A stretch of 63,887 nt of DNA, counting the filler, from Octopus bimaculoides (lineage: Eukaryota): the NCBI RefSeq assembly GCF_001194135.2. It is 5 parts of 5 records of this genome, joined end to end, with 100 filler letters (N's around TTAATTAATTAA, not from the genome) between each part and the next. Parts side by side here need not be neighbours in the genome. Positions count along the whole stretch, not along the records: positions 18,013 to 33,646 come from NC_068993.1; 4 more parts are not named here. One strand, written 5' to 3'. The translations under genes were made by a program, and so were the position numbers. The notes beneath the pieces were generated by a model, which had not been told where the DNA came from, did not search any database, and saw only the letters and a program-made list of their open reading frames with translations. Positions 18,013 to 33,746 of the stretch are shown here, in pieces (position 1 is the first letter of the stretch; each line of letters opens with the position of its first letter).

Positions 18013-18045
<33 letters not shown>

Positions 18046-18216
18046 ACATATTTATATATATAGGCGCGCGTGCACGCACACACTCACACACACGCACACG
18101 CACATACACACGCATACACCTTCATACGAACGGACACATACACACAAAGTGTTCGGAAAAGATATTGTATGTTAACAATGAGTGGACTTCATCCTATATC
18201 TGTCGGCCTTTTCTTC

Positions 18217-18260
18217 TGACATCATATAAGACATGTGACCTAACACACTACGTCACAAAC
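18217..18260 (+). promoter_or_regulatory. Putative composite CRE-like + E-box promoter block of orphan gene 1
   Basis: TGACATCA-N7-CATGTGACC-TAACACACTACGTCAC; a homologous block with identical spacing lies upstream of the paralog (21263-21308). Confidence 0.55.
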
Positions 18261-18496
18261 CAACGACTGAGCGTTTCATGGCCGCTCGGCCTGCTAGAAA
18301 TAGCAACCAAATCGTTTTCAGATCACCCTCTACTGTCCCATGTAGAGGACACATTTCATAATGAAGTCGTAGACACCCTTTAAAAACAGGTTGATCCTGG
18401 TTTTAAATTTGATCCTGGCTTTAATCAGATTTTGATCTGTGACTAACCTATAATATACAGAAAAGATCTTGGGCCGTCAGATATCACTATTTGGCA

Positions 18497-18919
18497 ATGG
18501 AAAACGATGAGACTCTTCGAACTTACATGGTTTCTTTGTATTTGCCTTATCTAAGAGACAGATCCACGGATCCGAGCGCTAAACGAGTAAATACGGCCAG
18601 TGCCGGTCCTGCGCGGAATCGCCCGAAAGCTCTGAAACGAATAAAGACAACTTTTAAGAGAACGGGCAGAAGACTTCGCAAACACTTTTCGCGTTTAACA
18701 TCGAGGTCATCCAGTGTCCCCACCTTCAGCAGGCAAACGTCAAGCAAAGAGCAAATTGAAACAAACCAAGGAAGTGAGGAATCTTCAACAGCATCAAAAG
18801 CTCTTTCTGAGGTAGTTAAAGATATTTGTGATTTGAAACTGGAGACATTAGAGGGCGATAAACATATAATTCCGGTGGTACAAGACACCGAGAAAACTTC
18901 AAAATCTCAGATGAATTAG
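18497..18919 (+). CDS. Orphan basic protein 1 (140 aa) with an Arg/Lys-rich amphipathic segment
   Basis: Uninterrupted non-repetitive ORF with Kozak-like GCAATGG. It aligns without gaps to the 21342 ORF (24/63 identities, synonymous third-position changes). A possible acceptor (CTAAC...TACAG) ends at 18460. Confidence 0.7.
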   Translation: MENDETLRTYMVSLYLPYLRDRSTDPSAKRVNTASAGPARNRPKALKRIKTTFKRTGRRLRKHFSRLTSRSSSVPTFSRQTSSKEQIETNQGSEESSTASKALSEVVKDICDLKLETLEGDKHIIPVVQDTEKTSKSQMN

Positions 18920-19494
18920 CACTGAACAGATTTGGTGAAATATCGTTATGTGATGATACAATTATCAAATAACAATTAAGTTATATAAACTTTTGATAAA
19001 TGATAATTTGATTTGAATTTAAATGAGTTTTTACCTTTTATGGTACCTTCCTTTTGTAAACTTTTTCATACGAAAAATGAAAAAAATTTCACATTTCGGT
19101 ATACACGCTGGTATATTTTATAGCAGTGTACATTTGGCAACCACGAGATATCGAGTTCAGCCTCTTTGAGCGGCACCTTGGGCAAGTGTCTTTTTCTCTA
19201 TCTCCTCCGCTCCCCGTTTCTCTCCCCTCTCTCTCTTTCCAATTGTCACATCCCGGATGTGCTGCCAGGTTAAGTTGAGGGTGCTGAAGAGTGTCTATGT
19301 CTATTCGTGACTACACAGGCACCTAAAACAATTAGCGAAAGTATGTTACATTTTACATGCCGTACTTACTTGCAAATGACGGTTGTCTGAATTGTACTTT
19401 ATCGGGGTGAGGTATAGACGCTGTTATTATCTCCATATAATAATAATAATAATAATAATAATAAGGATTTCATCTATTTGCCACAAGGGCGAAA

Positions 19495-19726
19495 TCCTTT
19501 CTACTATAGGCACAAGGCCTGAAATTTTGGAGATGGGAACTGGTCGATTACATCGACACCAGTGTTTAACTGGTACTTAACTTATCGACCCCGAAAGGAT
19601 GAAAGGCAAAGTCGACTTCGGTAGAATTTGAACTCAGAACGTAGCAACGGACGAAAAACCGCTAAGCATTTCGACCGTCGCGCTAACGATTCTGCCAGTT
19701 TCTCAGTAATAATAATAATAATAATA

Positions 19727-19780
<54 letters not shown>

Positions 19781-19785
19781 GTTGC

Positions 19786-19837
<52 letters not shown>

Positions 19838-19965
19838 ATTACTATTATACTTATAATAATCCTTTCTACAATAGACACAAAGCCTAACATATTAGGGGAG
19901 GGGACTAGTCGATTACATCGAGCCTAGTGTTTCACTGGTACTTATTCCATCGACCCCCATCGTCG
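19495..19965 (-). mobile_element. Two tandem SINE B copies separated by a compound (AAT)(ATT)(GTT) microsatellite
   Basis: Family B matches at 19495-19705 and 19855-19965. Confidence 0.85.
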
Positions 19966-19967
19966 AC

Positions 19968-20633
19968 CCATCACCTCCCCAAACAGCCGCACACATCTGC
20001 ACACATCTGCTCAGAACTGAGTAGCACACGCCCGTCCTGATTCGTCAAAGACTTGATCATAGTTTTGTTTCCACGTTGCTTCTTAACCGTTCGGGCCCAT
20101 CGGACGGCTTTAGTTACTTCGTGTTTTAGTGCACGGTCCTTAGCTCTGACAACGCAACCTTCGAGTTTCGCCTCAAAGAAATGGTCAAGGGCCATTCTCG
20201 TCGCTAACACGTCGGTCGGGGTGCCTTTATTAATAGCTTCTTCTAGTTTGCTAACTAGTTTTCCCTCTAATCTATTTCTTTCTATTGCTAAATCTTATCA
20301 ATTCTACTTTAACCGCTCTCTTCAGAGCGAACCACCACCGGCTGTTGATAGCCCCTGTCAACTTTCTTTCTGCCCTTTTCTGGGTAAGACAGGCCCTCGT
20401 CAACTGCCGCTTAACTAGTTCGCTTATCCGGTCCCTGTAGCCTTTGCGAGCCGGTAAGGACGCATTCAACCTCCAGTAACCGGGTCCCAGTCTACGGGTC
20501 CTATCTAAATCGACTGTGCATATCACAAATTTGTGATCTGTGTAGCGGATCAATTTAAATTGGAGGTCAACCTAAGCTATCCGTATCCCAGACCTAACAA
20601 ATATTCTATCTAAATACGATCTAGATGACCCAC
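19968..20633 (-). mobile_element. Tx1/L1-like LINE ORF2 fragment (end of APE endonuclease plus linker), frameshifted
   Basis: Translates SRSYLDRIFV...RYTDH...GPGYWRLNASL...RWWFALK...EGCVVRA. These match the APE C-terminal motifs and the GxGYWKLN linker motif of L1/Tx1 elements. Confidence 0.85.
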
Positions 20634-21040
20634 TGTTAACTAACGGGGCATATTATGCTTCTCTGCTGCAGAAATTGCCTGATGCTATCAAAGCAGAGAG
20701 GCGTGGCATGCTGACCAATGGAGTCGGCCTCCTCCAAGACAACGCCCCGGTTCACAATGCGCATGTTGCCCAGATGAAAGTACACTCCTGCGGCTATAAA
20801 ATCCTTCCTCATTTCACTTACTCTCCTGACCTCATACCACCTGACCTCCACCTCTTTCCAACCCTTAAGTCTTTTTTTTTTTTTTGAAGGGGAAGCACTT
20901 TTGGATGATGATGAACTTATTTCCGAAGTAAAGTTTTGGCTCCAGACGCAACCTACAGACCTCTATAGGCGAGGTCTTCACTGCTGCATAAATCAATGAG
21001 AGAAGCGTGTCAGAGGAAATCTTTAATGAGCACACCTCGT
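20634..21040 (+). mobile_element. Mariner (DD34D) transposase 3' fragment with 3' TIR
   Basis: YYASLLQKL...LLQDNAPVH...YSPDLIPPDLHLFP with exactly 34 residues between the aspartates; ends TAATGAGCACACCTCGTA. Confidence 0.9.
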
Positions 21041-21042
21041 AC

Positions 21043-21075
<33 letters not shown>

Positions 21076-21262
21076 TGTATGTATGTATGTATGTGTGTGT
21101 GTATGTATGTATGTATATACATGCATACATACAATCCTACATACATACACATAGATGCTCACATACACACATATATACACACACCTACACACACGCATGC
21201 AACGATGGAAAAGTTCTAATGAATAAGAAGACTTGCAAGAAAATGATACTGTAGCGCTCTGA

Positions 21263-21308
21263 TGATGTCACATTAGCCACGTGACCAAAACATACTACAT
21301 CACAGAAA
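21263..21308 (+). promoter_or_regulatory. Putative composite CRE-like + E-box promoter block of orphan gene 2
   Basis: TGATGTCA-N7-CACGTGACC-AAAACATACTACATCAC; homologous to 18217-18260. Confidence 0.55.
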
Positions 21309-21341
21309 CTCGAAACAATCAGACATTTGTTTGTTGACAAC

Positions 21342-21611
21342 ATGGATCGAGCTGACAAAATGGTTTTGTATTTACCTGACCATATCGATAAGATTACCTC
21401 AAATAACACAATCCCAGTTCTTATTGCCTTTATGATTCCGCAGTGGGAACAGCCGAAATTTTCGAATCCGATCCGAATAGGTTTGAAGAAAGCGGGGAAG
21501 AAGCTTCGGCGATTTTTTTCGCGTGCAATATTAAGGTCGTCTCGTGTTAAGACTCTGAAGAAACATGCTATACGGGAACAAGAAGTGGAAACTTTTACCT
21601 GCTTAGTTTAA
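21342..21611 (+). CDS. Orphan basic protein 2 (89 aa), paralog of the 18497 ORF
   Basis: Kozak-like AACATGG; carries LYLP and IRIGLKKAGKKLRRFFSRAILRSSRVKT, collinear with ORF 18497; AATAAA at 21749-21754. Confidence 0.65.
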   Translation: MDRADKMVLYLPDHIDKITSNNTIPVLIAFMIPQWEQPKFSNPIRIGLKKAGKKLRRFFSRAILRSSRVKTLKKHAIREQEVETFTCLV

Positions 21612-22217
21612 TATGAAAGTTTTTTTCTTAAAATGACAGTAAAGAAATACTCCAAATATATTTATAGCTGCAGTTTGATGGCGCAAAGATTTTACGTCTG
21701 TTGTCAACCTTTTTATCAGCAGGAATGTAAAAATGATATTGTTATCAAAATAAATTCGAAATATCATTATGGAGATAAAAGAGACACGCGTGAATTCCTG
21801 GACTAAAAACACCCAAAACAAACAAAGACATTTAAAGGACAAACGTATACGCACGCATACGCACGCATACGCACGCACACAAAACATATAAAAGGACTTT
21901 AAAATAGCACAAACAGATACCACAAAAAAAAAAGATATTTCTAATAATCATATTAAGATTTCTTTATTTCATAATTTGAAAACATGTAAAATACTATAAC
22001 CATTAAAAAAAAAAAAAAAGAATGCTGTTTAAAAAAAATTACAATAAACATCTGTAAGGTAAATTTTAAATTACCTTTTGAAAATTGCAATACAATGTTT
22101 GTTAGAAGGAAAGGCACTTAGTACATTATGGTACATTTATACCAGCTGAAGCCAAAAATCAATAGGTCGTGTAATGGATTCTATTAACAAGGTTTTAAAA
22201 AAAATAAACACTTGTAC

Positions 22218-22250
<33 letters not shown>

Positions 22251-23085
22251 GGGAAATGGGTTGTTTTTGGCGCTCATGCCTTTCCAATAGATATTAGCAA
22301 TNNNNNNNNNNNNNNNNNNNNNNNNNNNNNNNNNNNNNNNNNNNNNNNNNNNNNNNNNNNNNNNNNNNNNNNNNNNNNNNNNNNNNNNNNNNNNNNNNNN
22401 NNNNNNNNNNNNNNNNNNNNNNNNNNNNNNNNNNNNNNNNNNNNNNNNNNNNNNNNNNNNNNNNNNNNNNNNNNNNNNNNNNNNNNNNNNNNNNNNNNNN
22501 NNNNNNNNNNNNNNNNNNNNNNNNNNNNNNNNNNNNNNNNNNNNNNNNNNNNNNNNNNNNNNNNNNNNNNNNNNNNNNNNNNNNNNNNNNNNNNNNNNNN
22601 NNNNNNNNNNNNNNNNNNNNNNNNNNNNNNNNNNNNNNNNNNNNNNNNNNNNNNNNNNNNNNNNNNNNNNNNNNNNNNNNNNNNNNNNNNNNNNNNNNNN
22701 NNNNNNNNNNNNNNNNNNNNNNNNNNNNNNNNNNNNNNNNNNNNNNNNNNNNNNNNNNNNNNNNNNNNNNNNNNNNNNNNNNNNNNNNNNNNNNNNNNNN
22801 NNNNNNNNNNNNNNNNNNNNNNNNNNNNNNNNNNNNNNNNNNNNNNNNNNNNNNNNNNNNNNNNNNNNNNNNNNNNNNNNNNNNNNNNNNNNNNNNNNNN
22901 NNNNNNNNNNNNNNNNNNNNNNNNNNNNNNNNNNNNNNNNNNNNNNNNNNNNNNNNNNNNNNNNNNNNNNNNNNNNNNNNNNNNNNNNNNNNNNCAACAT
23001 TTATAAATATAGTCTTTTATGTAAATCTATTGATTAATGAATTAATTACTTAATTAAAACGACAACTAACAGAACCAACAGAATT

Positions 23086-23140
<55 letters not shown>

Positions 23141-23406
23141 CGTGGTAAATATCTGATTCGAAGCTAATTGTATGAAAAAGATGGATACGTGGAAACACTG
23201 CGTAAAAATGAGCGCCATCTTTAATTATTTTTCTTTTTTAGAAAAAAAATAACAAATTCCAGATTTTCTTAAAACATTTCTGAATGCGTCTAAATGAAAA
23301 TTAAATAGTCTATGATGAATTTGTCATTCTAAGACATTTTTCAAATTAAAAGATGGGATTCAGTTTCGATTCCCACTAAGTGACAAATAAAACGAAAATG
23401 CCATTA

Positions 23407-23467
<61 letters not shown>

Positions 23468-24296
23468 CATTATTATTATTATTACTACTACTACTATTAC
23501 TTCTACTACTGCTACTGTTATTCTGTGCCTCTGAATGAAAGTTTCAATTAGTTACATGGAACTGATACATTTTTCCATTGTTTCGGTGTAAGAACCAANN
23601 NNNNNNNNNNNNNNNNNNNNNNNNNNNNNNNNNNNNNNNNNNNNNNNNNNNNNNNNNNNNNNNNNNNNNNNNNNNNNNNNNNNNNNNNNNNNNNNNNNNN
23701 NNNNNNNNNNNNNNNNNNNNNNNNNNNNNNNNNNNNNNNNNNNNNNNNNNNNNNNNNNNNNNNNNNNNNNNNNNNNNNNNNNNNNNNNNNNNNNNNNNNN
23801 NNNNNNNNNNNNNNNNNNNNNNNNNNNNNNNNNNNNNNNNNNNTATATATGTCATTTACTTTATAAAAGTTATATGATATTTAGAGGAATAGCTTCTTTA
23901 AGGTGAGTGCTGCTACGAAAGTGCCACAGATCACACTGCTGTGAGCAACAACGATGTTGGATCCATCTGGAAAGAAAGTTAAATACAATATCATTTAATA
24001 TAGCAGTAATAGTAAATATATAGATATGTTTATATATGTATATATATATATATGTGTGTGTGTGTGTATTTCATCTAATGACGTAATTAGTAGGTATGTA
24101 CCATAAGTGCATGGAAATCTTTGTTCAATAACGTGTACTTCATATAGTCAGCTATTCTAGAAACAGCTGTAAGACATTTTATGCAATATTTCTTAATCTC
24201 TTATCTACTCCAATTACTCTGCAATTATGTTTGAATTATAAACAATATGCTTTATAGTGATATCACATGTTTTGCTCGTCCCTTCTCCCTTTCTAA

Positions 24297-24337
<41 letters not shown>

Positions 24338-25548
24338 ACTCACACACACATACATACATATATAGGACACTCAATGACTTCATAAAATAAATAATATAGC
24401 AATGGTTATGTCATGCTGACGATTTTTGAAAAGAGTGAAATAGTGCTAAACATGATTGACGCTGACTAGAAGGGAATTTTACAAACTTTATAATAAACAA
24501 CAAAAAAGCATATATTCTATTCTATGCATTCTATGCATCTTTTACTTTATTGCTTAAATTAAAACCGCTACCAATGAAGAAATAATTGGCCCTATTGTAT
24601 TAACTGAATGCCAAGGGACTCCATATGTGTGTGCCTGTGTGCGCGCGCGCGTGTGCCAGCTACTTACTTGGTAGCAAGGTTCTGAAGGAAAGCATCTTGT
24701 TTTGCTCACCAAAGGTCTTGCAGGGTTTTATACTCCCAAATACTGCGATCATTTGTAGTGAATGAATTAAGGGTTTGCGCTTTGTCCCCATACTTAGTTC
24801 CATGTATGTATCTATGTATGTATCTCATTATTCAGTCAGGTTTCAAAATTTTTTCTCAATACAAAAAGAGCCAGTTTCTAGCCTAGATCCAAGGTTCCTT
24901 CGTTTGAATTCCAACAACATCAACAGAGTATATTTGCATGTATGTGTGTATATGTACAGTGTTAGGAGTGAGTGCCTGTACAGATGTGTATGCTTTGTTT
25001 CATGTATGTTTTCTCATGCATATAGCTGCAGGTCTAGACAAACGCACATATACTTAAATGATAAACTTCTGGAAAGTTTTACAATCTTTTACAGTTTTAG
25101 TGATCGCTTGGGAGTGTAGTCTACTCTGATCCGGAGTATTAGCAACTGTCAGGGTCTCAACTATGGGTTAATTTGTATACTATAGAAGGAACTTCAAGCA
25201 AAACCCTGACTGCCTTGTTAGTGCTTTGGGAAAGAAAGAGACAAGGAGAGTCAACTTCGATTGCAAATCAAAGAGCGAAGTCCTTCAGATGATCCGATGC
25301 CTTCTTTGACACCTTTCCGACAAGTCCTGGGTAAGTGGGGCTCTCTAGTCCAGTAAGACAACTCACATAAGAGAAGGCCATATCAGTGTAAAATACACAG
25401 CTTGCTGGTCACTGCGGCCGTCATAGCTCGCTGGCCACTGTGATCAGATTCTTAGTCTAAAGAGTGGGTTCGAAATGCACGGACTGACTATCACTTTAAA
25501 CTACTGCGCGCAGGCAGGAAAAAAAGCCCTGTAGCTGCAATCATCAGT

Positions 25549-25604
25549 TCACAGAGTCACGTGAGTGCATGCAGCTATTTCCTCATAATCTTCAGATACG
25601 TCAT
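25549..25604 (-). CDS. Candidate last exon of the six-Cys secreted-protein gene
   Basis: Acceptor CTCTATGTTGCAG, 123-nt intron from the previous exon, phase-compatible; encodes (N)DVSEDYEEIAACTHVTL*. An alternative is read-through of the previous exon to the stop at 25684. Confidence 0.4.
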
Positions 25605-25727
25605 CTGCAACATAGAGTATCAAATGAAATAGTTTGAAAGAGTCGTCTAACTTCATTAGCAGACGTTAACTTTATCTAACTCTTCAATCTGCGAAGAATT
25701 TGGTTATTATTGCATTGGAATACTCAC

Positions 25728-25864
25728 TTTTCTTTTTGGGTTTTGGTGCTGTATCGCATTTCAGTGACTCCAGTTTTGATTTTGCTTGGTCAATTATTTT
25801 CACAACACTCTCACCGCAGCCTGTACTAGCACTTCTTATACAATGCAAATGATCCAGGCTCAGT
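25728..25864 (-). CDS. Internal exon (137 nt) of the six-Cys, neuritin-like secreted protein
   Basis: Acceptor GTTTGTTTTGCAG, donor GTGAGT. Only one frame is open (LSLDHLHCIRSASTGCGESVVKIIDQAKSKLESLKCDTAPKPKKK), and its phase matches the 26414-26522 exon. Confidence 0.8.
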
Positions 25865-26124
25865 CTGCAAAACAAACGCGCACATGTACAAAATTATACA
25901 CAACATGTTTGTGTGTGTGTGTGTGTATGTATAGAGACAATTATATGTATATGTACGTATATATGTATATATGTGTACGCAAGCATGCATGTAAACATGT
26001 ATGTGTATATATACGTATGTATGTATGTATGTATGTATGTATGTGTGTGTATGTATGTGTGTAAAGAGAGGTCTATTTCCTCGCAGGAAGATAGGGATGT
26101 TGGTAAGTATTATACTTATGCAAC

Positions 26125-26325
26125 GTTAGGCAGTGAGCTGGTAGAGTCGTTACTGCACCGGCCAAAATACCTAGTGGTATTTCGTCCGCTTTTACGTTTT
26201 GAGTTGAGGTTGCTTTCATCCTTTTGAGGTCGATACATTAAGTACCAGTGGAACACCAGGGTCGATGTAATCAGCTGACCCACTCCCTCGAAACAGCTGG
26301 CCTTGTAACCAAAATTTGAAATCGA
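26125..26325 (+). mobile_element. SINE family B in an intron
   Basis: GGCAGTGAGCTGGTAGAGTCGTTAC...GAGGTCGATACATTAAGTACCAG. Confidence 0.8.
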
Positions 26326-26413
26326 TATTACATCCAAAGTTGTAAACCTCTATTCCTAATATTAACCACCATGTGGCGAGTGACAATCTGGTGTGCATGT
26401 GGTTTGAACTTAC

Positions 26414-26522
26414 TTGCAGAAAGCCTTGTGGTTAGCTTCCATTTCTCTTGATTTCTTCATGTAGTTATCCTGACAATCTGAAACTTTCGAGATATCACAT
26501 GCGGCCATTGCATAAGTGACCA
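26414..26522 (-). CDS. Internal exon (109 nt) of the six-Cys, neuritin-like secreted protein, including a probable signal-peptide C-region
   Basis: Acceptor TTTTCTTCTTGTTTCAG, donor GTAAGT; encodes VTYAMAACDISKVSDCQDNYMKKSREMEANHKAFC. The upstream exon was not found and may lie in a gap. Confidence 0.82.
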
Positions 26523-26857
26523 CTGAAACAAGAAGAAAATTATACATGTGAAAGAAAATATTGTGCAACAAGTGTGTGAATACGTGCATATATATATATG
26601 TNNNNNNNNNNNNNTATATAGTAAAAAAATATACAAATAATCTCAAAGACGAAGTAAAAATCCAAACAGGGTTGACACTCGGAAAATTGGAAGAAGTCTT
26701 TACCATTTCGAACCTACGCTCCTCCACGGAAAAGATAAATGAGGAGAGAGAAAAATAAAAAGTGTGAAGAACATACATACATACATACAAACATACATAC
26801 ATACATACATACATACATACATACATACATACATACATACGGTAAAGAGTTAAGACC

Positions 26858-27095
26858 TACTTCGGTCACGAATGACCATTGGATTGCACCTAGAAAGTTA
26901 CCCTCCGAGGTATAAGTCCGGGCAGGGTTGTTTACGAAAGGCCAGCAGTAGCCCATGTATACCTTCTCTCCCCTTCTCCGTGCCACCGGTGTTATCCAAG
27001 GGAAAGGCAAAGACCGATGACGTTTGATATCAGTGACGTCACAACTCACTTCTATAGCTGAGTGAACTGGAGGAACGTGAAATATACTTGCTCCA
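26858..27095 (-). mobile_element. SINE family C, 5'-truncated
   Basis: CTTCGGTCACGAATGACCATTGGATTGCACCTAGAAAGTTACCCTCCGAGG matches the copies at 9913 and 45440. Confidence 0.85.
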
Positions 27096-27379
27096 ATTAA
27101 CAATTTAGACAGCCTCTCGGAAAGTTGTTACTCCATCTCTGTGAAATTGTCCTTGTGTGTGTGTGTGTGTGTATGCGTGTGTGTATGTGTGTGTGTGTAT
27201 TTGTGTGTGTGTGTGTATGCGTGCGAATGTGTATCAGAGAAAAAGAGAAGTGAGAAAGAGAGAGAGACAGAGAGAGAGAGCAAGACCCTGGAAAAGAGAT
27301 AGACAGAAAAGCAGCCATGATTCAGAAGAAAATAAAGAGTAGAGAAGGAAAGACAGACTGGAGATAATGCTAAAAGGAA

Positions 27380-27388
27380 CAGACAGGC

Positions 27389-27451
<63 letters not shown>

Positions 27452-27460
27452 TAGATAGAC

Positions 27461-27515
<55 letters not shown>

Positions 27516-27580
27516 CAGATAGATAGATAGACAGACAGATAGATAAATAGATAGATAGATAGACAGATAGATAGATAGAC

Positions 27581-27644
<64 letters not shown>

Positions 27645-27645
27645 C
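27380..27645. repeat. (GACA)n/(GATA)n microsatellite
   Basis: Directly visible. Confidence 0.97.
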
Positions 27646-27743
27646 TACTGATATACGATCCATAGGAATTGATAAGAAAAAGCATAATACCGTCACTGTA
27701 TCACTTGTAAATCAAGGGAAAGTAGAAGAACAAAAAGTATTTC

Positions 27744-27753
27744 AGCCAATCAG
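27744..27753 (+). promoter_or_regulatory. CCAAT box (NF-Y consensus)
   Basis: AGCCAATCAG about 140 bp upstream of the ATG at 27891. Confidence 0.3.
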
Positions 27754-27890
27754 AATCTTTCATTCACTTAACAATAATCATAGTTTAAGTTTCACACAAC
27801 TGAAACATTAAAGCAGATCTTGGAAGTAGATTCGGTTTTAAAAAATTCCTATTGATTTCTTATAAGATACAAGACCACTAAGTAGTTAGG

Positions 27891-28069
27891 ATGGGAGAAT
27901 ATATTAACATTTTGAATGCAGCATTTATCTTATCGTCTTCAAAAGAGGAATCTAAAGTGAATTCGAGCGAGAATTGCGATGGCAAACGAGATTTGAGCAA
28001 TGTAATAGGACGTGAAAGGAATCAAATACTTGAAAGAGTTGCATCAAGTATCGCTCCACAACAGTTGTG
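27891..28069 (+). CDS. 5' part of an orphan ORF, truncated by a gap; possible distant paralog of the 18497 ORF
   Basis: AGGATGG context, an acceptor-like TTTCTTATAAG ending at 27866, and 59 open codons. SSKE....N and LSNVI...LE resemble SSKE....N and LSEVV...LE in ORF 18497. Confidence 0.4.
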
Positions 28070-29149
28070 NNNNNNNNNNNNNNNNNNNNNNNNNNNNNNN
28101 NNNNNNNNNNNNNNNNNNNNNNNNNNNNNNNNNNNNNNNNNNNNNNNNNNNNNNNNNNNNNNNNNNNNNNNNNNNNNNNNNNNNNNNNNNNNNNNNNNNN
28201 NNNNNNNNNNNNNNNNNNNNNNNNNNNNNNNNNNNNNNNNNNNNNNNNNNNNNNNNNNNNNNNNNNNNNNNNNNNNNNNNNNNNNNNNNNNNNNNNNNNN
28301 NNNNNNNNNNNNNNNNNNNNNNNNNNNNNNNNNNNNNNNNNNNNNNNNNNNNNNNNNNNNNNNNNNNNNNNNNNNNNNNNNNNNNNNNNNNNNNNNNNNN
28401 NNNNNNNNNNNNNNNNNNNNNNNNNNNNNNNNNNNNNNNNNNNNNNNNNNNNNNNNNNNNNNNNNNNNNNNNNNNNNNNNNNNNNNNNNNNNNNNNNNNN
28501 NNNNNNNNNNNNNNNNNNNNNNNNNNNNNNNNNNNNNNNNNNNNNNNNNNNNNNNNNNNNNNNNNNNNNNNNNNNNNNNNNNNNNNNNNNNNNNNNNNNN
28601 NNNNNNNNNNNNNNNNNNNNNNNNNNNNNNNNNNNNNNNNNNNNNNNNNNNNNNNNNNNNNNNNNNNNNNNNNNNNNNNNNNNNNNNNNNNNNNNNNNNN
28701 NNNNNNNNNNNNNNNNNNNNNNNNNNNNNNNNNNNNNNNNNNNNNNNNNNNNNNNNNNNNNNNNNNNNNNNNNNNNNNNNNNNNNNNNNNNNNNNNNNNN
28801 NNNNNNNNNNNNNNNNNNNNNNNNNNNNNNNNNNNNNNNNNNNNNNNNNNNNNNNNNNNNNNNNNNNNNNNNNNNNNNNNNNNNNNNNNNNNNNNNNNNN
28901 NNNNNNNNTATATATATATATATATATTCAGTAAATGTATAACAAGGACTTCGGACCTCACCTCTTATGTATATGAATACATACTGGAAGCGTTAGAAAT
29001 GAAACTAATATATATAGATACATAATGAAAGTAATTTAAATTGAAACCATATAATAGTGAAGGTATTAATAGAGATTATCTTGTTTCACTTTTGACATGT
29101 AATACAGGAACAGTGTAAGAGATAAGAGCTTGCTCCGGGCTCGCATTAG

Positions 29150-29425
29150 ACAAGAAGTTGAAATTTTGGGGGGCCCATGACACTGCTTGGACTCTAAGTA
29201 ATGCATGTGTAAAATTTTAATGAAATCCATTGGGTAGTTCTCGAATTTTAGTGATGCAAACATACAGACAGACTGACTAACAGACAGACTGACTTACAGA
29301 CAGACTGACTAACAGACAGACTGACTTACAGACAGACTGACTAACAGACTGACTGACTAACAGACAGACTGACTAACAGACAGACTGACTAACAGACACA
29401 CATTCTCAGCGTTATATATATAGAT
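29150..29425 (+). mobile_element. Helitron/HINE-like non-autonomous element 3' end with (CAGACTGACTAA)n array
   Basis: Internal ACAGAC-type repeats followed by the terminal ...TTATATATATAGAT, a pattern typical of such elements. Confidence 0.5.
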
Positions 29426-30138
29426 AACTTTATAACTTTATAATTTTTTACATACACACACATACACATACATACACGCACTTATACATATATATATACA
29501 TACATGCATACATACATATATATATANNNNNNNNNNNNNNNNNNNNNNNNNNNNNNNNNNNNNNNNNNNNNNNNNNNNNNNNNNNNNNNNNNNNNNNNNN
29601 NNNNNNNNNNNNNNNNNNNNNNNNNNNNNNNNNNNNNNNNNNNNNNNNNNNNNNNNNNNNNNNNNNNNNNNNNNNNNNNNNNNNNNNNNNNNNNNNNNNN
29701 NNNNNNNNNNNNNNNNNNNNNNNNNNNNNNNNNNNNNNNNNNNNNNNNNNNNNNNNNNNNNNNNNNNNNNNNNNNNNNNNNNNNNNNNNNNNNNNNNNNN
29801 NNNNNNNNNNNNNNNNNNNNNNNNNNNNNNNNNNNNNNNNNNNNNNNNNNNNNNNNNNNNNNNNNNNNNNNNNNNNNNNNNNNNNNNNNNNNNNNNNNNN
29901 NNNNNNNNNNNNNNNNNNNNNNNNNNNNNNNNNNNNNNNNNNNNNNNNNNNNNNNNNNNNNNNNNNNNNNNNNNNNNNNNNNNNNNNNNNNNNNNNNNNN
30001 NNNNNNNNNNNNNNNNNNNNNNNNNNNNNNNNNNNNNNNNNNNNNNNNNNNNNNNNNNNNNNNNNNNNNNNNNNNNNNNNNNNNNNNNNNNNNNNNNNNN
30101 NNNNNNNNNNNNNNNNNNNNNNNNNNNNNNNNNNNNNC

Positions 30139-30493
30139 ACACAAAAAAAAATGGAAAACAAGACAAGCAACACGGCGAACGACCATTCGTCAGGATGAAT
30201 GGAGGTCGATTTTATCGGATATATGCAGAACTTTAGTCGACTCTATGCCCAGAAGACTTAATGCAGTCATTGATAGCAAGGGTGGTCGCACCAAATATTG
30301 GATATAGCAAGGGTGTACATATTTTTGTAACCTTTGAAAATTAATATTTCGTTCGTATCTTTGAAAATATTTATTGTTTTGTGTTCCAAATTTGTATAAT
30401 GTTTGCACGTATAATATATTTTATTCAGTATAAATTTCGTTTGATTTTACTGAAATTTTTTTAGGGGTGTACATACTTCTGTGAACAACTGTA
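30139..30493 (+). mobile_element. Tc1-like transposase C-terminus with 3' TIR
   Basis: EWRSI...CRTLVDSMPRRLNAVIDSKGGRTKY is a typical Tc1 terminus; ends ...GTGAACAACTG plus TA. Confidence 0.88.
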
Positions 30494-30828
30494 AATGCAC
30501 ATACATGCATACATACATTCAAGCATGCATACATATAGTTTCATTTTTCTTTTATTATTTTAGTGCGCTTAGTCATTGTCCTGCGGTCATTCTGAAGCTA
30601 CGTGTTCAGTGGTTTTTGTCGATTGTATCGATCTGAGTATTTATTTCATCCTGGTACTTATTTTATTGATCTCCTTTTATCGAGTGGCTAATTTAACAAT
30701 TTCGTTATAAAGCAACGTAAAAAAATTCTCTGATTTACACCGAAGAAACATAAACACATACCACCCTTGTCTCTTTCGACGGCTAAAGGACAAAAACAAC
30801 ATAAGTGTTACTCGTAAACAACCACCCA

Positions 30829-30870
<42 letters not shown>

Positions 30871-31074
30871 NNNNNNNNNNATATACGTACAGTTAATCGT
30901 GAGCGATATTATTCAATGAGAGGCCTCACACTCACTCCAAATCTGGTTTCCTCGCTATCAGCAAGGATCTCTTCTGGAGAAACTCATCATTAACAAAGCT
31001 GGGACATGTTAAAGACTGGTTCTTCTCTTAAGATCAGAAAGTACTTAATGGCCTTGATTTACTGATAAAGCGCA

Positions 31075-31550
31075 AACGAGGTCTATAATGGAGAAGACTT
31101 TGAAGATAAGGCGAACTATCATCAAGATGGAGCACCCCCACACTGCTATCACGATGTTAGATCCTTCCTTGAGATCTTGCCAAACAGGTGGATTGGACGA
31201 AGGAGTTTCGTTGAATACCCTCCGCGTTCACTAGACCTCGCACCACTAGATATTTTTATTGGGATACCTAAAAGACAAAGTCTACGCTATGAAACTTGCA
31301 ACAGTCGCTGAATGAGCGCAGCCATTGAACGAGAATGCACACAAATACCAAACGAATTGTTTGCGATTCCATTGCTTCGCGCTGTCAGCAGTTCATGGAC
31401 CAGAACGGACGTCAGTTTGAAAACAGGAGTTGACAAAACAATAGAATAATGTCTGTAGATTCTATCAAATTTTGAAAATGAAATGTATCTGAATAAACAC
31501 CTACTTTACAATTATCTAAAGTGTGTATACATTTTTTGGAGACACCCTAT
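31075..31550 (+). mobile_element. DD41D-like (rosa/Visitor) Tc1/mariner fragment with 3' TIR
   Basis: HQDGAPPH...RWIGRR...YPPRSLDLAPLD (40-residue spacing in this degenerate copy); ends TTTTTGGAGACACCCTATA. Confidence 0.82.
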
Positions 31551-31600
31551 AGATATATGTATGTATGTATGTATAGATAGATAGATAGTTAGATAGATAA

Positions 31601-31684
<84 letters not shown>

Positions 31685-31696
31685 TTAGATAGATAA

Positions 31697-31762
<66 letters not shown>

Positions 31763-31763
31763 G

Positions 31764-31801
<38 letters not shown>

Positions 31802-31807
31802 AAAAAG

Positions 31808-32023
31808 GTGAGTTGGCAGAATTGATAGCGTGCTGGACAAAATGGTTAGCGGTGTTTCACCCGTCGCTACGTTCTGACTTCAAATTCCACCGAGGTCGAC
31901 TTTACCTTTCATTCTTTCGGGGTCGATGAAATACGTACCAGTTACGCACTGGGGACGGTGTAATCGACTTATCCCCTCCCACCAAATTTCAGGCTCAGTG
32001 CCTGTATACATGTAGTAGAAAAG

Positions 32024-32030
<7 letters not shown>
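31808..32030 (+). mobile_element. SINE family B
   Basis: Matches the other family B copies. Confidence 0.85.
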
Positions 32031-32054
<24 letters not shown>

Positions 32055-32334
32055 TATATATATATATGTATGTATATGTATGTATATATATATANNNNNN
32101 NNNNNNNNNNNNNNNNNNNNNNNNNNNNNNNNNNNNNNNNNNNNNNNNNNNNNNNNNNNNNNNNNNNNNNNNNNNNNNNNNNNNNNNNNNNNNNNNNNNN
32201 NNNNNNNNNNNNNNNNNNNNNATTTATGTATATATAAAGGGGTGAGAGATTTTAGCCGATGTCATGACCCTTCTACTTCACTGGTACTTTCGTATTATGA
32301 ACAACCAAATGATGAAAGGCAAAGTTTCAAATTT

Positions 32335-32535
32335 TGACACAAGGCCAGCAATATCGGTGGAGGGTGTAAGTCGATAACATCGACCCCAGTACTCAAATAA
32401 TACTTATTTTATCGATCCCGAAAACATGAAAGGCAAAGTCGTCCTCGGCGGAATTTGAACTCAGAACGTAAAGCTGGACGAAATGTTGCTAAGTTTTTTT
32501 CCCGGTGCGTTAACGATACTGCCAGCACACTACCT
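32335..32535 (-). mobile_element. SINE family B
   Basis: Matches the other family B copies. Confidence 0.85.
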
Positions 32536-32930
32536 TAACCCTTTAGCATTCAAACCGGTGAGATCCAACCCAAATATTCTACCTGTTTATGTTCAAACTG
32601 GTCAGATCCGGATTCTCATACTGAGTCGAAAATGTCATTCTTAATAATAAGCAATCACATGGAAACCTTGAAGCTAGCTATGAGATAATGCACGACTAAT
32701 TCAAAACACTGGAAATAAATGAGTTATCAGAGATGAGGGCAGCAGCATCAAAATCCCTCATTGATCAAATGCCACATATTACAAGAGGTTCCAAGTAATG
32801 ATGTAGCTCAGTCAACGGTGATGCTCCAGCATGACCGCAGCTTTAAAGTTGAAACATTTTAAAATAGCAAAAATAGTTGACATAAAATAGTATCACATTT
32901 GACAGAGTAATTTGAATGTGGAAAGGTTAA
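32535..32930. mobile_element. piggyBac-like MITE with TTAA target-site duplication
   Basis: TTAA-CCCTTTAGCATTCAAA ... TTTGAATGTGGAAAGG-TTAA: imperfect TIRs with TTAA on both sides. Confidence 0.65.
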
Positions 32931-33526
32931 AAATGTGAAAAGATTATGATGGCTTACATAAGCTTAGCTTGTGTGCGTATATCTGTGTATACGTGTGTGT
33001 GTGTGTATGCGAGAGGGAGAGTATAGGAACGTATATGTATGTGCATGTATGTACATGTATGTCTCTATGTGAATATATATATATTCATATATATGTGCGT
33101 GTGTGTATGTGTGAGTGTGTGGGGACTCTTACGAGCTTGCTTGCATGCGTGAGAGGTAAACATTGATGTGATGTAAATAATTGAAACATCCTGTCCTTAA
33201 TCTTGCATTTCGTTTTCCTTCTTTTTTTAATCAAATGTCACATGACCTGCTTGAATTTAACCTACATCTGATTTTTCGGAGAGTTGACCTCATTTCCTTG
33301 TTTGTCAATGAACGCTTGCGCGCTCGCACACAGACACATACACACACGTATACACACATACACACACGCATGCGCGCACATATACACATACGTACAAACA
33401 CACGCACACACACATACATGTACGCACCTTGTGATCTCAAATTCCTGATGGATCTCAAGGCTACGTCATGATGTATAGCGGCCAGTCCTTTTCCTCCTCA
33501 CTTCTAACCCTATGTGAATTCCTCCA

Positions 33527-33606
33527 AGGAGGAGGAGGGGGAGGAGGAGGAGAAGAAGAAGAAGAAGAAGAAGAAGAAGAAGAAGAAGAAGAAGAAGAAG
33601 AAGAAG

Positions 33607-33638
<32 letters not shown>

Positions 33639-33640
33639 AT
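33527..33640. repeat. Compound trinucleotide run (GGA)n(GAA)n(CAA)n
   Basis: Directly visible. Confidence 0.95.
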
Positions 33641-33746
33641 AATTTTNNNNNNNNNNNNNNNNNNNNNNNNNNNNNNNNNNNNNNNNNNNNTTAATTAATT
33701 AANNNNNNNNNNNNNNNNNNNNNNNNNNNNNNNNNNNNNNNNNNNN

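What the first reader, a model, noticed from the sequence alone, without database searches (positions are those of the whole stretch)
18497..21611. Pair of paralogous orphan short ORFs with a conserved basic amphipathic helix
Seen in the sequence: ORFs 18497-18919 (140 aa) and 21342-21611 (89 aa) align without gaps over 63 residues from LYLP to V.T, with 24 identities. The core reads KRIKTTFKRTGRRLRKHFSRLTSRSSSVPT versus NPIRIGLKKAGKKLRRFFSRAILRSSRVKT. Conserved residues differ at third codon positions (GGC/GGG, CGC/CGG, TCA/TCG, TCC/TCT, GTC/GTT, ACC/ACT, TTG/TTA), and many changes are K/R swaps, as expected under protein-level constraint. Both have RnnATGG starts and sit on the same strand of one assembled segment, separated by TE debris. 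Inference: a lineage-specific tandem gene family. The cationic amphipathic segment could bind membranes, nucleic acid or calmodulin, or be a processed cationic defence peptide. I recognise no known family.
Basis: partly seen in the sequence, partly recalled or inferred. Interest (0 to 1): 0.8.

Follow-up and report, generated by a model that had tools for sequence, protein, structure and literature searches.

The report
Octopus-only family of small basic proteins
The two short reading frames are real, old duplicates belonging to an Octopus-restricted family of at least three small genes. They share one conserved positively charged helix, and two of them share a conserved upstream DNA motif. 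Neither expression nor function has been shown.

Summary
ORF A (18497-18919, 140 aa) and ORF B (21342-21611, 89 aa) align without gaps over 76 residues (26 identities, E=1e-11).

The piece is Octopus bimaculoides. ORF A is exon 1 of UniProt A0A0L8GQ51. Both ORFs are intact at the syntenic O. vulgaris locus (85% and 88% aa identity). An exhaustive profile search found a third paralog elsewhere in O. bimaculoides (A0A0L8I6Y9, 112 aa), whose ortholog I found in another Octopus sample. Nothing turned up outside Octopus, and there is no Pfam or PDB match.

Between paralogs, third codon positions are near saturation while positions 1 and 2 keep about 60% identity. This argument does not identify the strand, because an antisense frame shares the same wobble positions and scores as well for A versus B. 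The sense frame is chosen on other grounds:
- the third paralog scores better in the sense frame;
- ATG and Kozak context are conserved;
- homology starts at the N-terminus;
- the antisense frame has stops.

Ortholog dN/dS is weak (about 0.7, not significant), but the 23-aa core changes far less than the rest (3/69 versus 49/267).

A and B share a CRE-like upstream block that is invariant between species. The conserved core is a cationic amphipathic helix followed by an RxxS-rich stretch. There is no signal peptide, so a secreted defence peptide is unlikely. I found no transcript evidence. This is an ordinary but genuine orphan gene family.

The parts
18497..18919 (+). Paralog A: 140-aa ORF including the stop. 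It is identical to residues 1-105 of UniProt A0A0L8GQ51_OCTBM. The O. vulgaris ortholog is CAI9731514.1 (144 aa, 85% identity).
21342..21611 (+). Paralog B: 89-aa ORF including the stop. It is not annotated in any database searched. An intact 89-aa ortholog lies at L001:19913-20182 in O. vulgaris (88% identity).
18641..18709 (+). Conserved core of A (residues 49-71, IKTTFKRTGRRLRKHFSRLTSRS). It lies in the predicted helix 44-70, and the hydrophobic moment peaks here (0.80, net charge +9 in the 18-residue window 44-61).
21471..21539 (+). Conserved core of B (residues 44-66, IRIGLKKAGKKLRRFFSRAILRS). It lies in the predicted helix 38-66. There is one nucleotide difference from O. vulgaris across these 69 nt.
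18213..18257 (+). Upstream block of A: the CRE-like octamer TGACATCA (18217-24), TATAAG, CATGTGACC, then ACGTCAC. The aligned part (18222-18257) has 0 of 36 mismatches to O. vulgaris. The block ends 240 nt before the ATG.
21259..21304 (+). Upstream block of B: the CRE-like octamer TGATGTCA (21263-70), CACGTGACC, then ACATCAC. The aligned part (21268-21304) has 0 of 37 mismatches to O. vulgaris. The octamer ends 71 nt before the ATG.
21612..21790 (+). Probable 3' UTR of B. Divergence from O. vulgaris is 4%, against 7-14% in the other flanks. AATAAA lies at 21749 and is conserved in O. vulgaris.
20890..20931 (+). Second coding exon of the database model A0A0L8GQ51 (GKHFWMMMNLFPK*). It lies in the reading frame of a mariner-like transposase fragment and is joined to a GT donor at 18812. 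It is probably a chimeric or exonised ending, not part of the family.

Best explanation
A and B are tandem members of an old family of small protein-coding genes that appears restricted to Octopus. The genes code for 89-144 aa, seem to be single-exon, and number at least three (A and B here, C on another scaffold).

Each protein has four parts:
- a short acidic N-terminus (M-D/E ... LYLP or FDFYNYL);
- a fast-evolving linker;
- a conserved basic amphipathic helix (I-[KR]-x3-[KR]-[KR]-x-G-x-[KR]-L-R-x2-F/V-S-R-x3-R-S);
- a Ser/Thr-rich tail ending in E-T.

There is no signal peptide or membrane span, so the products would be cytosolic or nuclear and mostly disordered.

Shown: paralogy, codon-periodic conservation, intact orthologs, a slowly evolving core, and a conserved CRE-like upstream block in A and B.

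Inferred: the genes are transcribed from a CRE-dependent promoter. The helix would be a docking surface for an acidic partner, with Ca2+/calmodulin or acidic membrane lipids the most likely candidates. Phosphorylation of the adjacent RxxS/T sites would switch that binding off, as in MARCKS-type electrostatic switches.

The confidence of 0.65 is for 'real protein-coding family on the + strand'. The specific docking-and-switch mechanism deserves about 0.2.
For: Paralogy:
- A versus B scores E=1e-11 without gaps.
- The third paralog P0004 came from an exhaustive profile search (E=2.4e-4) and rises to E=1e-28 with the five-sequence profile.

Coding signature between paralogs:
- Positions 1+2 keep about 60% identity while position 3 keeps 30-43% (Fisher p 0.001-0.05).
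- pS is 0.64-0.76, which is saturated, while pN is 0.38-0.42. Unconstrained DNA of this age would not be alignable.

Strand choice:
- The sense frame beats the antisense frame in all comparisons with C (74 v 42, 71 v 47, 55 v 37, 54 v 38).
- ATG with R-3/G+4 is present in 5 of 5 sequences, and homology begins at the Met.
- The antisense frames lack an ATG and stop inside the homologous region in A and C.

Recent constraint:
- All six ortholog ORFs are intact. The chance estimate under neutral substitution is 0.09 for A and B together and about 0.025 with C.
- The core shows 3 changes in 69 residues against 49 in 267 elsewhere (p=0.0026).
- In A's core there are 3 synonymous changes and 1 non-synonymous change.

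Promoter-like block:
- The A-B upstream similarity beats 1000 of 1000 shuffles.
- The block has 0 of 73 mismatches between species, while flanks diverge 7-14%. That outcome has P of about 5e-4.
- C has a perfect TGACGTCA 73 nt before its ATG; B's octamer lies 71 nt before its ATG.

Other gene features:
- AATAAA lies 138 nt after the stop in B and 103 nt after it in C.
- AF2 predicts a helix over the core in A and in B.
- The hydrophobic moment peaks in the core in all three, at 0.67-0.80.
- Gene A was predicted independently in two species' annotations.
Against: - No transcript or peptide evidence. No exact-match ORF was found in any assembly of sequencing runs for A, B, P0002 or P0004. The contigs carrying copy C end in microsatellites, so they are genomic rather than cDNA.
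- Ortholog dN/dS is 0.72 for A and 0.74 for B, not significantly below 1. The ORFs are no better conserved at nucleotide level than some flanks.
- B is unannotated everywhere.
- A has no AATAAA or ATTAAA within 600 nt of its stop and has three upstream ATGs in its 240-nt leader.
- The upstream similarity of C to A and B is not significant by alignment.
- The antisense frame scores as well as the sense frame for A versus B.
- AF2 confidence is low (mean pLDDT 52-54).
- The functional mechanism rests only on composition and helix geometry. No IQ or other calmodulin-binding profile matches.
Confidence: 0.65

Rival explanations
1. The constraint acts on the opposite strand. The conserved blocks would be coding sequence, for example exons of an unannotated minus-strand gene, read in the antisense frame that shares wobble positions with the + ORFs. 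The + ORFs would then be open only as a by-product.
For: - The antisense frame is open across the core in all five sequences.
- It gives 29-31 identities of 75 and BLOSUM 109-126 for A versus B, against 25-26 identities and 98 for the sense frame.
- The codon-position test cannot separate the two frames. Antisense position 3 equals sense position 3, worked out from the coordinates.
- Read directly from the sequence: B's LYLP codons read CAG|GTAAAT on the minus strand, which resembles a splice donor, and TTTCTTCAG|A at about 21555 resembles an acceptor.
Against: - Antisense scores fall well below sense scores in every comparison with paralog C.
- The antisense frames have no ATG. A has a stop inside the homologous block in both species, and C stops inside the sense ORF.
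- The putative splice sites are not at equivalent positions in A.
- The antisense translations have no Pfam match.
- Only gene A is called within the 20-kb O. vulgaris locus.
- The conserved upstream block, the Kozak context and the downstream AATAAA are all oriented for the + strand.
Confidence: 0.07
2. The ORFs are relics. The family was once coding but is now decaying or non-functional in living Octopus. The ORFs would be intact in two species by chance, and the annotation would be ab initio noise.
For: - Ortholog dN/dS is 0.72-0.74 and not significant.
- ORF divergence (0.06-0.08) is close to flank divergence (0.07-0.14).
- There is no transcript evidence.
- B is unannotated.
- The O. bimaculoides model for A ends in a transposon fragment.
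- A lacks a canonical poly(A) signal.
Against: - All six ORFs are intact with unchanged start and stop positions. The only indel within an ORF is 12 nt and in frame. The joint chance estimate is 0.025-0.09 before counting indels.
- The core evolves about four times more slowly than the rest at the amino-acid level (p=0.0026), with synonymous changes in A's core.
- The upstream block is invariant between species.
Confidence: 0.18
3. The blocks are duplicated non-coding functional elements (regulatory DNA or a structured or long non-coding RNA), and the open frames are incidental.
For: - The flanks are as conserved as the ORFs, or more so: B's 3' flank diverges 4% and the upstream block 0%.
- B's core has no synonymous changes between species.
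Against: - Conservation between paralogs has a three-base periodicity in all paralog pairs.
- The alignments are gapless in frame over 46-76 codons.
- There is no Rfam match in the piece.
- K/R swaps and synonymous differences at invariant residues fit a protein-level constraint.
Confidence: 0.07
4. The ORFs derive from a transposable element or a virus.
For: The ORFs sit among transposon fragments and SINE-like repeats.
Against: - Only three loci are known, each with a syntenic or orthologous counterpart. There are no further copies in the 15.6-kb piece or in 20 kb of O. vulgaris sequence.
- The database holds only 2-4 related proteins among billions, so this is not a multi-copy family.
- There is no Pfam match.
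- Similarity between A and B is limited to the ORF and one upstream block.
Confidence: 0.03

Closest known systems
Database entries A0A0L8GQ51_OCTBM, A0A0L8I6Y9_OCTBM and A0AA36BCB7_OCTVU / CAI9731514.1 (uncharacterised or hypothetical proteins)
   Same: - A0A0L8GQ51 residues 1-105 are identical to ORF A.
- CAI9731514.1 is ORF A's O. vulgaris ortholog.
- A0A0L8I6Y9 is the third paralog.
   Different: - None of these entries is named, grouped into a family or assigned a domain.
- ORF B and its ortholog are not annotated at all.
- The O. bimaculoides model replaces the last 35 residues of ORF A with 13 residues read from a mariner fragment.
MARCKS effector domain and similar basic phosphorylation-site domains (electrostatic-switch peptides that bind calmodulin and acidic lipids)
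   Same: A short, strongly cationic segment with interspersed aromatic or aliphatic residues and nearby Ser residues in basic contexts. Net charge is +4 to +9 and the hydrophobic moment is 0.67-0.80. The comparison itself rests on my own knowledge of MARCKS.
   Different: - No sequence homology: no Pfam hit at E<=10.
- No N-terminal Gly after the Met for myristoylation.
- The segment here is predicted to be a helix, whereas the MARCKS domain is extended.
- Binding has not been tested.
IQ-motif calmodulin-binding proteins (neurogranin, neuromodulin, PEP-19 type)
   Same: - These are small, largely disordered proteins with one basic helix.
- The profile search picked up an IQ-repeat protein at E=1.5e-5 summed over 8 repeats.
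   Different: - The hit is not supported by profile-profile comparison (probability 0.4%, E=0.14).
- The Pfam IQ model does not match.
- The IQxxxRGxxxR spacing is not met: G lies 8 residues after the I, not 6, and position 2 is K or R rather than Q (read from the sequences).
PKI (cAMP-dependent protein kinase inhibitor) pseudosubstrate
   Same: ORF A contains RTGRR, the same five residues as the PKI pseudosubstrate GRTGRRNAI (recalled from my own knowledge).
   Different: - B reads KAGKK and C reads RTGER.
- The positions after RR are L-R-K, not N-A-I, so there is no small P0 residue and no hydrophobic P+1 residue.
- The Pfam PKI model does not match.
- I treat this as coincidence.

Membership tests
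Protein-coding gene family (sense strand) | Conservation with three-base periodicity and saturated synonymous sites between paralogs | tested here: met
   Position 1+2 identity is about 0.60 and position 3 identity is 0.30-0.43 (p 0.001-0.05). pS is 0.64-0.76 and pN is 0.38-0.42. This feature is shared with one antisense frame.
Protein-coding gene family (sense strand) | Intact ORFs with conserved start and stop in orthologs | tested here: met
   A, B and C are each intact in two Octopus sources. The chance estimate is 0.025-0.09.
Protein-coding gene family (sense strand) | Purifying selection between orthologs (dN/dS significantly below 1) | tested here: inconclusive
   - Omega is 0.72 and 0.74, not significant, from only 47 substitutions.
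- The core-versus-rest contrast in amino-acid changes is significant (p=0.0026).
Protein-coding gene family (sense strand) | Transcription and translation | not testable with these tools
   No cephalopod transcriptome or proteome can be searched here. Exact-protein look-ups found only genomic contigs.
IQ calmodulin-binding motif (PF00612) | Match to the IQ profile, or the [ILV]QxxxRGxxx[RK] pattern | tested here: not met
   No Pfam hit at E<=10. hhalign probability against an IQ-repeat protein is 0.4%.
Secreted cationic antimicrobial or defence peptide precursor | N-terminal hydrophobic signal peptide | tested here: not met
   The N-termini read MENDETLRTY, MDRADKMVLY and MDKNEDEMIR. They are acidic with no hydrophobic run. 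This was judged by eye, not with a signal-peptide predictor.
Transposable-element or viral ORF | Many dispersed copies, or a match to a TE or viral protein family | tested here: not met
   Three loci only and no Pfam match. A whole-genome copy count was not possible.
CRE-dependent promoter | TGACGTCA or a one-mismatch variant close upstream of the start, conserved between species | tested here: met
   - A has TGACATCA, B has TGATGTCA and C has TGACGTCA.
- The A and B blocks are invariant between species.
- Binding by CREB/ATF factors and promoter activity have not been tested.

The most novel reading that the evidence does not exclude
The family is an Octopus-specific set of CRE-driven micro-proteins. 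Their conserved cationic helix and adjacent phospho-serine stretch would form a new lineage-restricted modulator of Ca2+/calmodulin or kinase signalling. One possible setting is activity-regulated neurons; another is post-meiotic germ cells, where CRE promoters are typical. That would make it a cephalopod invention in a core signalling pathway.
Probability: 0.1. Interest if true: 0.6.

Novelty: new member of a known kind. Interest (0 to 1): 0.3.

Why it matters
Octopus genomes carry many lineage-restricted genes of unknown function. This work turns two isolated 'uncharacterised protein' entries and one unannotated ORF into a defined family. The family has three paralogs, a conserved 23-residue core, a conserved upstream block shared by A and B, and a corrected gene model for A.

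That gives a concrete, cheap target for expression mapping and peptide-binding assays. It also gives a worked example of why third-codon-position arguments must be checked against the wobble-sharing antisense frame.

On its own this is an ordinary orphan family. It would become interesting only if expression or binding data tie it to a cephalopod-specific trait.

Tried and rejected
- Pfam on A, B, C, the C ortholog and the three antisense translations: nothing. The only line was Prion at E=0.23 for A.
- PDB profile search: SufU/NifU-like at E=0.04. I rejected it because the catalytic Cys residues are not aligned and the Pfam NifU_N model does not hit.
- IQ-repeat protein P0003 from the profile search: rejected by hhalign.
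- Word-indexed search with B: no candidates.
- Exact-protein look-ups for transcripts of A, B, P0002 and P0004: none.
- The Logan contigs for copy C looked at first like possible transcripts, because five samples gave similar lengths. They end in microsatellites on both sides, so they are genomic unitigs.
- Literature searches for the accession numbers and the run numbers: no papers.
- Further copies in the piece or in the O. vulgaris locus, by tblastn and by an HMM on six-frame translations: none.
- Rfam on the whole piece: none.
- A short 5'-UTR intron in A (CAG|GTTGAT ... ACAG|A): rejected, because the acceptor reads ACAT in O. vulgaris.
- Splitting NG86 into conserved block versus rest: not significant.
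- Upstream alignment of C against A or B: not significant. Only microsatellite sequence aligned.
- Fold search: not run, because both models have pLDDT of about 52-54.
Full report
**What is there**

The piece (18013-33646) is AT-rich eukaryotic DNA full of microsatellites and assembly gaps. ORF A (18497-18919, 140 aa) and ORF B (21342-21611, 89 aa) lie on the + strand, 2.4 kb apart. BLASTP aligns them without gaps over 76 residues, with 26 identities and E=1e-11. At DNA level the similarity is confined to the ORFs and one upstream block.

**Source and orthologs**

ORF A is 100% identical to residues 1-105 of UniProt A0A0L8GQ51 from Octopus bimaculoides. It is 85% identical to a 144-aa hypothetical protein of O. 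vulgaris, CAI9731514.1.

The O. vulgaris locus (L001, chromosome OX597826.1) is syntenic. It carries an intact ortholog of A at L001:10001-10435 and an intact, unannotated 89-aa ortholog of B at L001:19913-20182, which is 88% identical. The only indel inside either ORF is 12 nt and in frame.

The database model for A joins a GT donor at 18812 to an exon at 20890-20931. That exon lies in the frame of a mariner-like transposase fragment, so this ending is probably a chimera. The uninterrupted ORF is what is conserved in O. vulgaris.

**A third paralog**

I built a profile from A, its ortholog and B, and ran it with HMMER against 1.84 billion representative proteins. It returned only A itself, an IQ-repeat protein, and a 112-aa O. 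bimaculoides protein, A0A0L8I6Y9 (P0004, E=2.4e-4).

P0004 shares the N-terminus (MDKNEDEMIR...FDFYNYL) and the core (IRKAIMRTGERLRSFVSRFTSRS). With the five-sequence profile it scores E=1e-28. The same search found an 82%-identical ortholog (P0009) on genomic contigs from five sequencing runs of an unidentified Octopus sample, with one P41L allele.

The IQ-repeat hit fails profile-profile comparison, at 0.4% probability. No family member matches Pfam or any solved structure convincingly. The family therefore has at least three members and no detectable relative outside Octopus.

**Is it coding, and on which strand?**

Between paralogs, synonymous sites are saturated (pS 0.64-0.76) while pN is 0.38-0.42. 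Identity is about 60% at codon positions 1 and 2 and 30-43% at position 3 in every paralog pair. DNA this old would not be alignable without constraint, and the constraint has a three-base period.

There is a catch. The antisense frame whose third positions coincide with the sense third positions is also open across the core in all five sequences. For A versus B it scores as well or better than the sense frame (BLOSUM62 109-126 against 98).

The + strand is chosen for four other reasons:
- In every comparison with paralog C the sense frame scores clearly higher (74 v 42, 71 v 47, 55 v 37, 54 v 38).
- All five sequences have an ATG with R at -3 and G at +4, and the homology begins at that Met.
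- The antisense frames have no ATG and stop inside the homologous region in A and C.
- The upstream block and the downstream AATAAA signals are oriented for the + strand.

**Recent constraint is weak but present**

| Region (O. bimaculoides vs O. vulgaris) | Nucleotide divergence |
|---|---|
| Flanks and the mariner fragment | 0.07-0.14 |
| ORF A | 0.078 |
| ORF B | 0.059 |

NG86 gives omega of 0.72 for A and 0.74 for B, neither significant. Under random substitution at the observed density, A stays open with probability 0.21, B with 0.43 and C with about 0.29. The joint value is 0.09 for A and B and 0.025 with C, before counting frameshifts.

Amino-acid changes avoid the 23-residue core: 3 of 69 against 49 of 267 elsewhere (Fisher p=0.0026). 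In A's core there are three synonymous changes and one non-synonymous change.

**Gene-like surroundings**

A and B share a 37-nt upstream block, at 18222-18257 and 21268-21304. Its similarity beats 1000 of 1000 shuffles. It shows no mismatch between the two species in either copy, 0 of 73 in total, which has P of about 5e-4 at 10% divergence.

Just 5' of this block lies a one-mismatch variant of the palindromic cAMP-response element TGACGTCA. It reads TGACATCA in A and TGATGTCA in B. Copy C has the perfect octamer 73 nt before its ATG, and B's lies 71 nt before its ATG. The upstream similarity of C to A and B is not significant by alignment, so I treat this as suggestive only.

B and C have AATAAA 138 nt and 103 nt after the stop. 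In B it lies inside a 3' flank that diverges only 4%. A differs: its leader is 240 nt with three upstream ATGs, and it has no canonical poly(A) hexamer within 600 nt.

**The protein**

AlphaFold2 gives low-confidence models (pLDDT 52-54). The only better-supported element is a helix over the conserved core, at A 44-70 and B 38-66, with block pLDDT of 65-77.

In all three paralogs the maximum helical hydrophobic moment (0.67-0.80) falls in this core, which has net charge +4 to +9. Hydrophobic residues recur with 3-4 residue spacing (L46, I49, F53, L60, F64, L67 in A). Directly after the helix come RxxS/T sites, such as SRLTSRSSS and SRFTSRSTS.

The N-termini are acidic with no hydrophobic signal sequence and there is no membrane span. 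The products would therefore be intracellular, which argues against a secreted defence peptide.

My best mechanistic guess is a docking helix for calmodulin or acidic lipids whose binding is tuned by phosphorylation. It rests on these features and on general knowledge of such peptides. I give it about 0.2.

**Verdict**

What is still missing is any evidence of transcription or translation. That could not be tested here, because no cephalopod transcriptome or whole genome is searchable with these tools.

Two of the three members already sit in databases as uncharacterised proteins, so the novelty is modest. The result is a defined orphan family, an unannotated member (B), a corrected model for A, and a shared regulatory block.

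Noticed in passing
window 18547-18888 (-), 21185 to about 21600 (-); L001 10051-10392 (-), 19759-20133 (-); L002 antisense of 134-472: An antisense frame that shares wobble positions with the sense ORFs is open across the conserved core in all five sequences. For A versus B it scores as well as the sense frame. It has no ATG, and its stops fall at different places in each copy.
   Followed up: yes
window 20636-20990 (+); L001 19141-19458: A mariner/Tc1-like transposase C-terminal fragment (LLQDNAPVHNAH...SPDLIPPDLHLFPTLK). It is orthologous in O. vulgaris at about 9% divergence, so it is older than the species split. The O. bimaculoides gene model for A borrows its frame as a terminal exon (20890-20931). 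Pfam DDE_3 reaches only E=0.026.
   Followed up: partly
window 19498-19698, 19858-19957, 31814-32006 (-), 32325-32525; many copies in L001 (e.g. 3953-4124, 11470-12016): A SINE-like repeat of about 200 nt at 68-80% identity, often followed by (ATT)n or (GTT)n microsatellites. It has no Rfam match and its family was not identified.
   Followed up: partly
window 19958-20637: A segment of about 680 bp between A and B has no counterpart in the 20-kb O. vulgaris locus. It carries minus-strand ORFs with a retrotransposon-like look (e.g. ...GPGYWRLNASL...) but no Pfam hit. Conversely, O. vulgaris has about 7 kb of extra sequence between the two genes (9.5 kb against 2.4 kb), including fragments that resemble reverse transcriptase.
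   Followed up: partly
window 21612-21790: The stretch downstream of ORF B is the best conserved long stretch at the locus, with 4% divergence from O. vulgaris. It contains a conserved AATAAA at 21749 and is probably a 3' UTR, but a separate conserved non-coding element is not excluded.
   Followed up: partly
window 27025-27041: A perfect CRE (TGACGTCA, 27034-27041) lies next to TGATATCA (27025-27032). The family HMM detects no family member nearby. Its significance is unknown.
   Followed up: no
window about 22300-22990, 23600-23850, 28070-28925, 29525-30140, 32095-32230: There are runs of N (assembly gaps) flanked by long microsatellites: (TATG)n, (CA)n, (CAGA)n and (GATA)n at 27370-27690, and (ATT)n. 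Much of the piece beyond 22 kb cannot be interpreted.
   Followed up: no
L006 (SRR11869384) versus L002-L005: Copy C carries a within-species amino-acid polymorphism (P41L). It lies in the fast-evolving linker, not in the core.
   Followed up: partly
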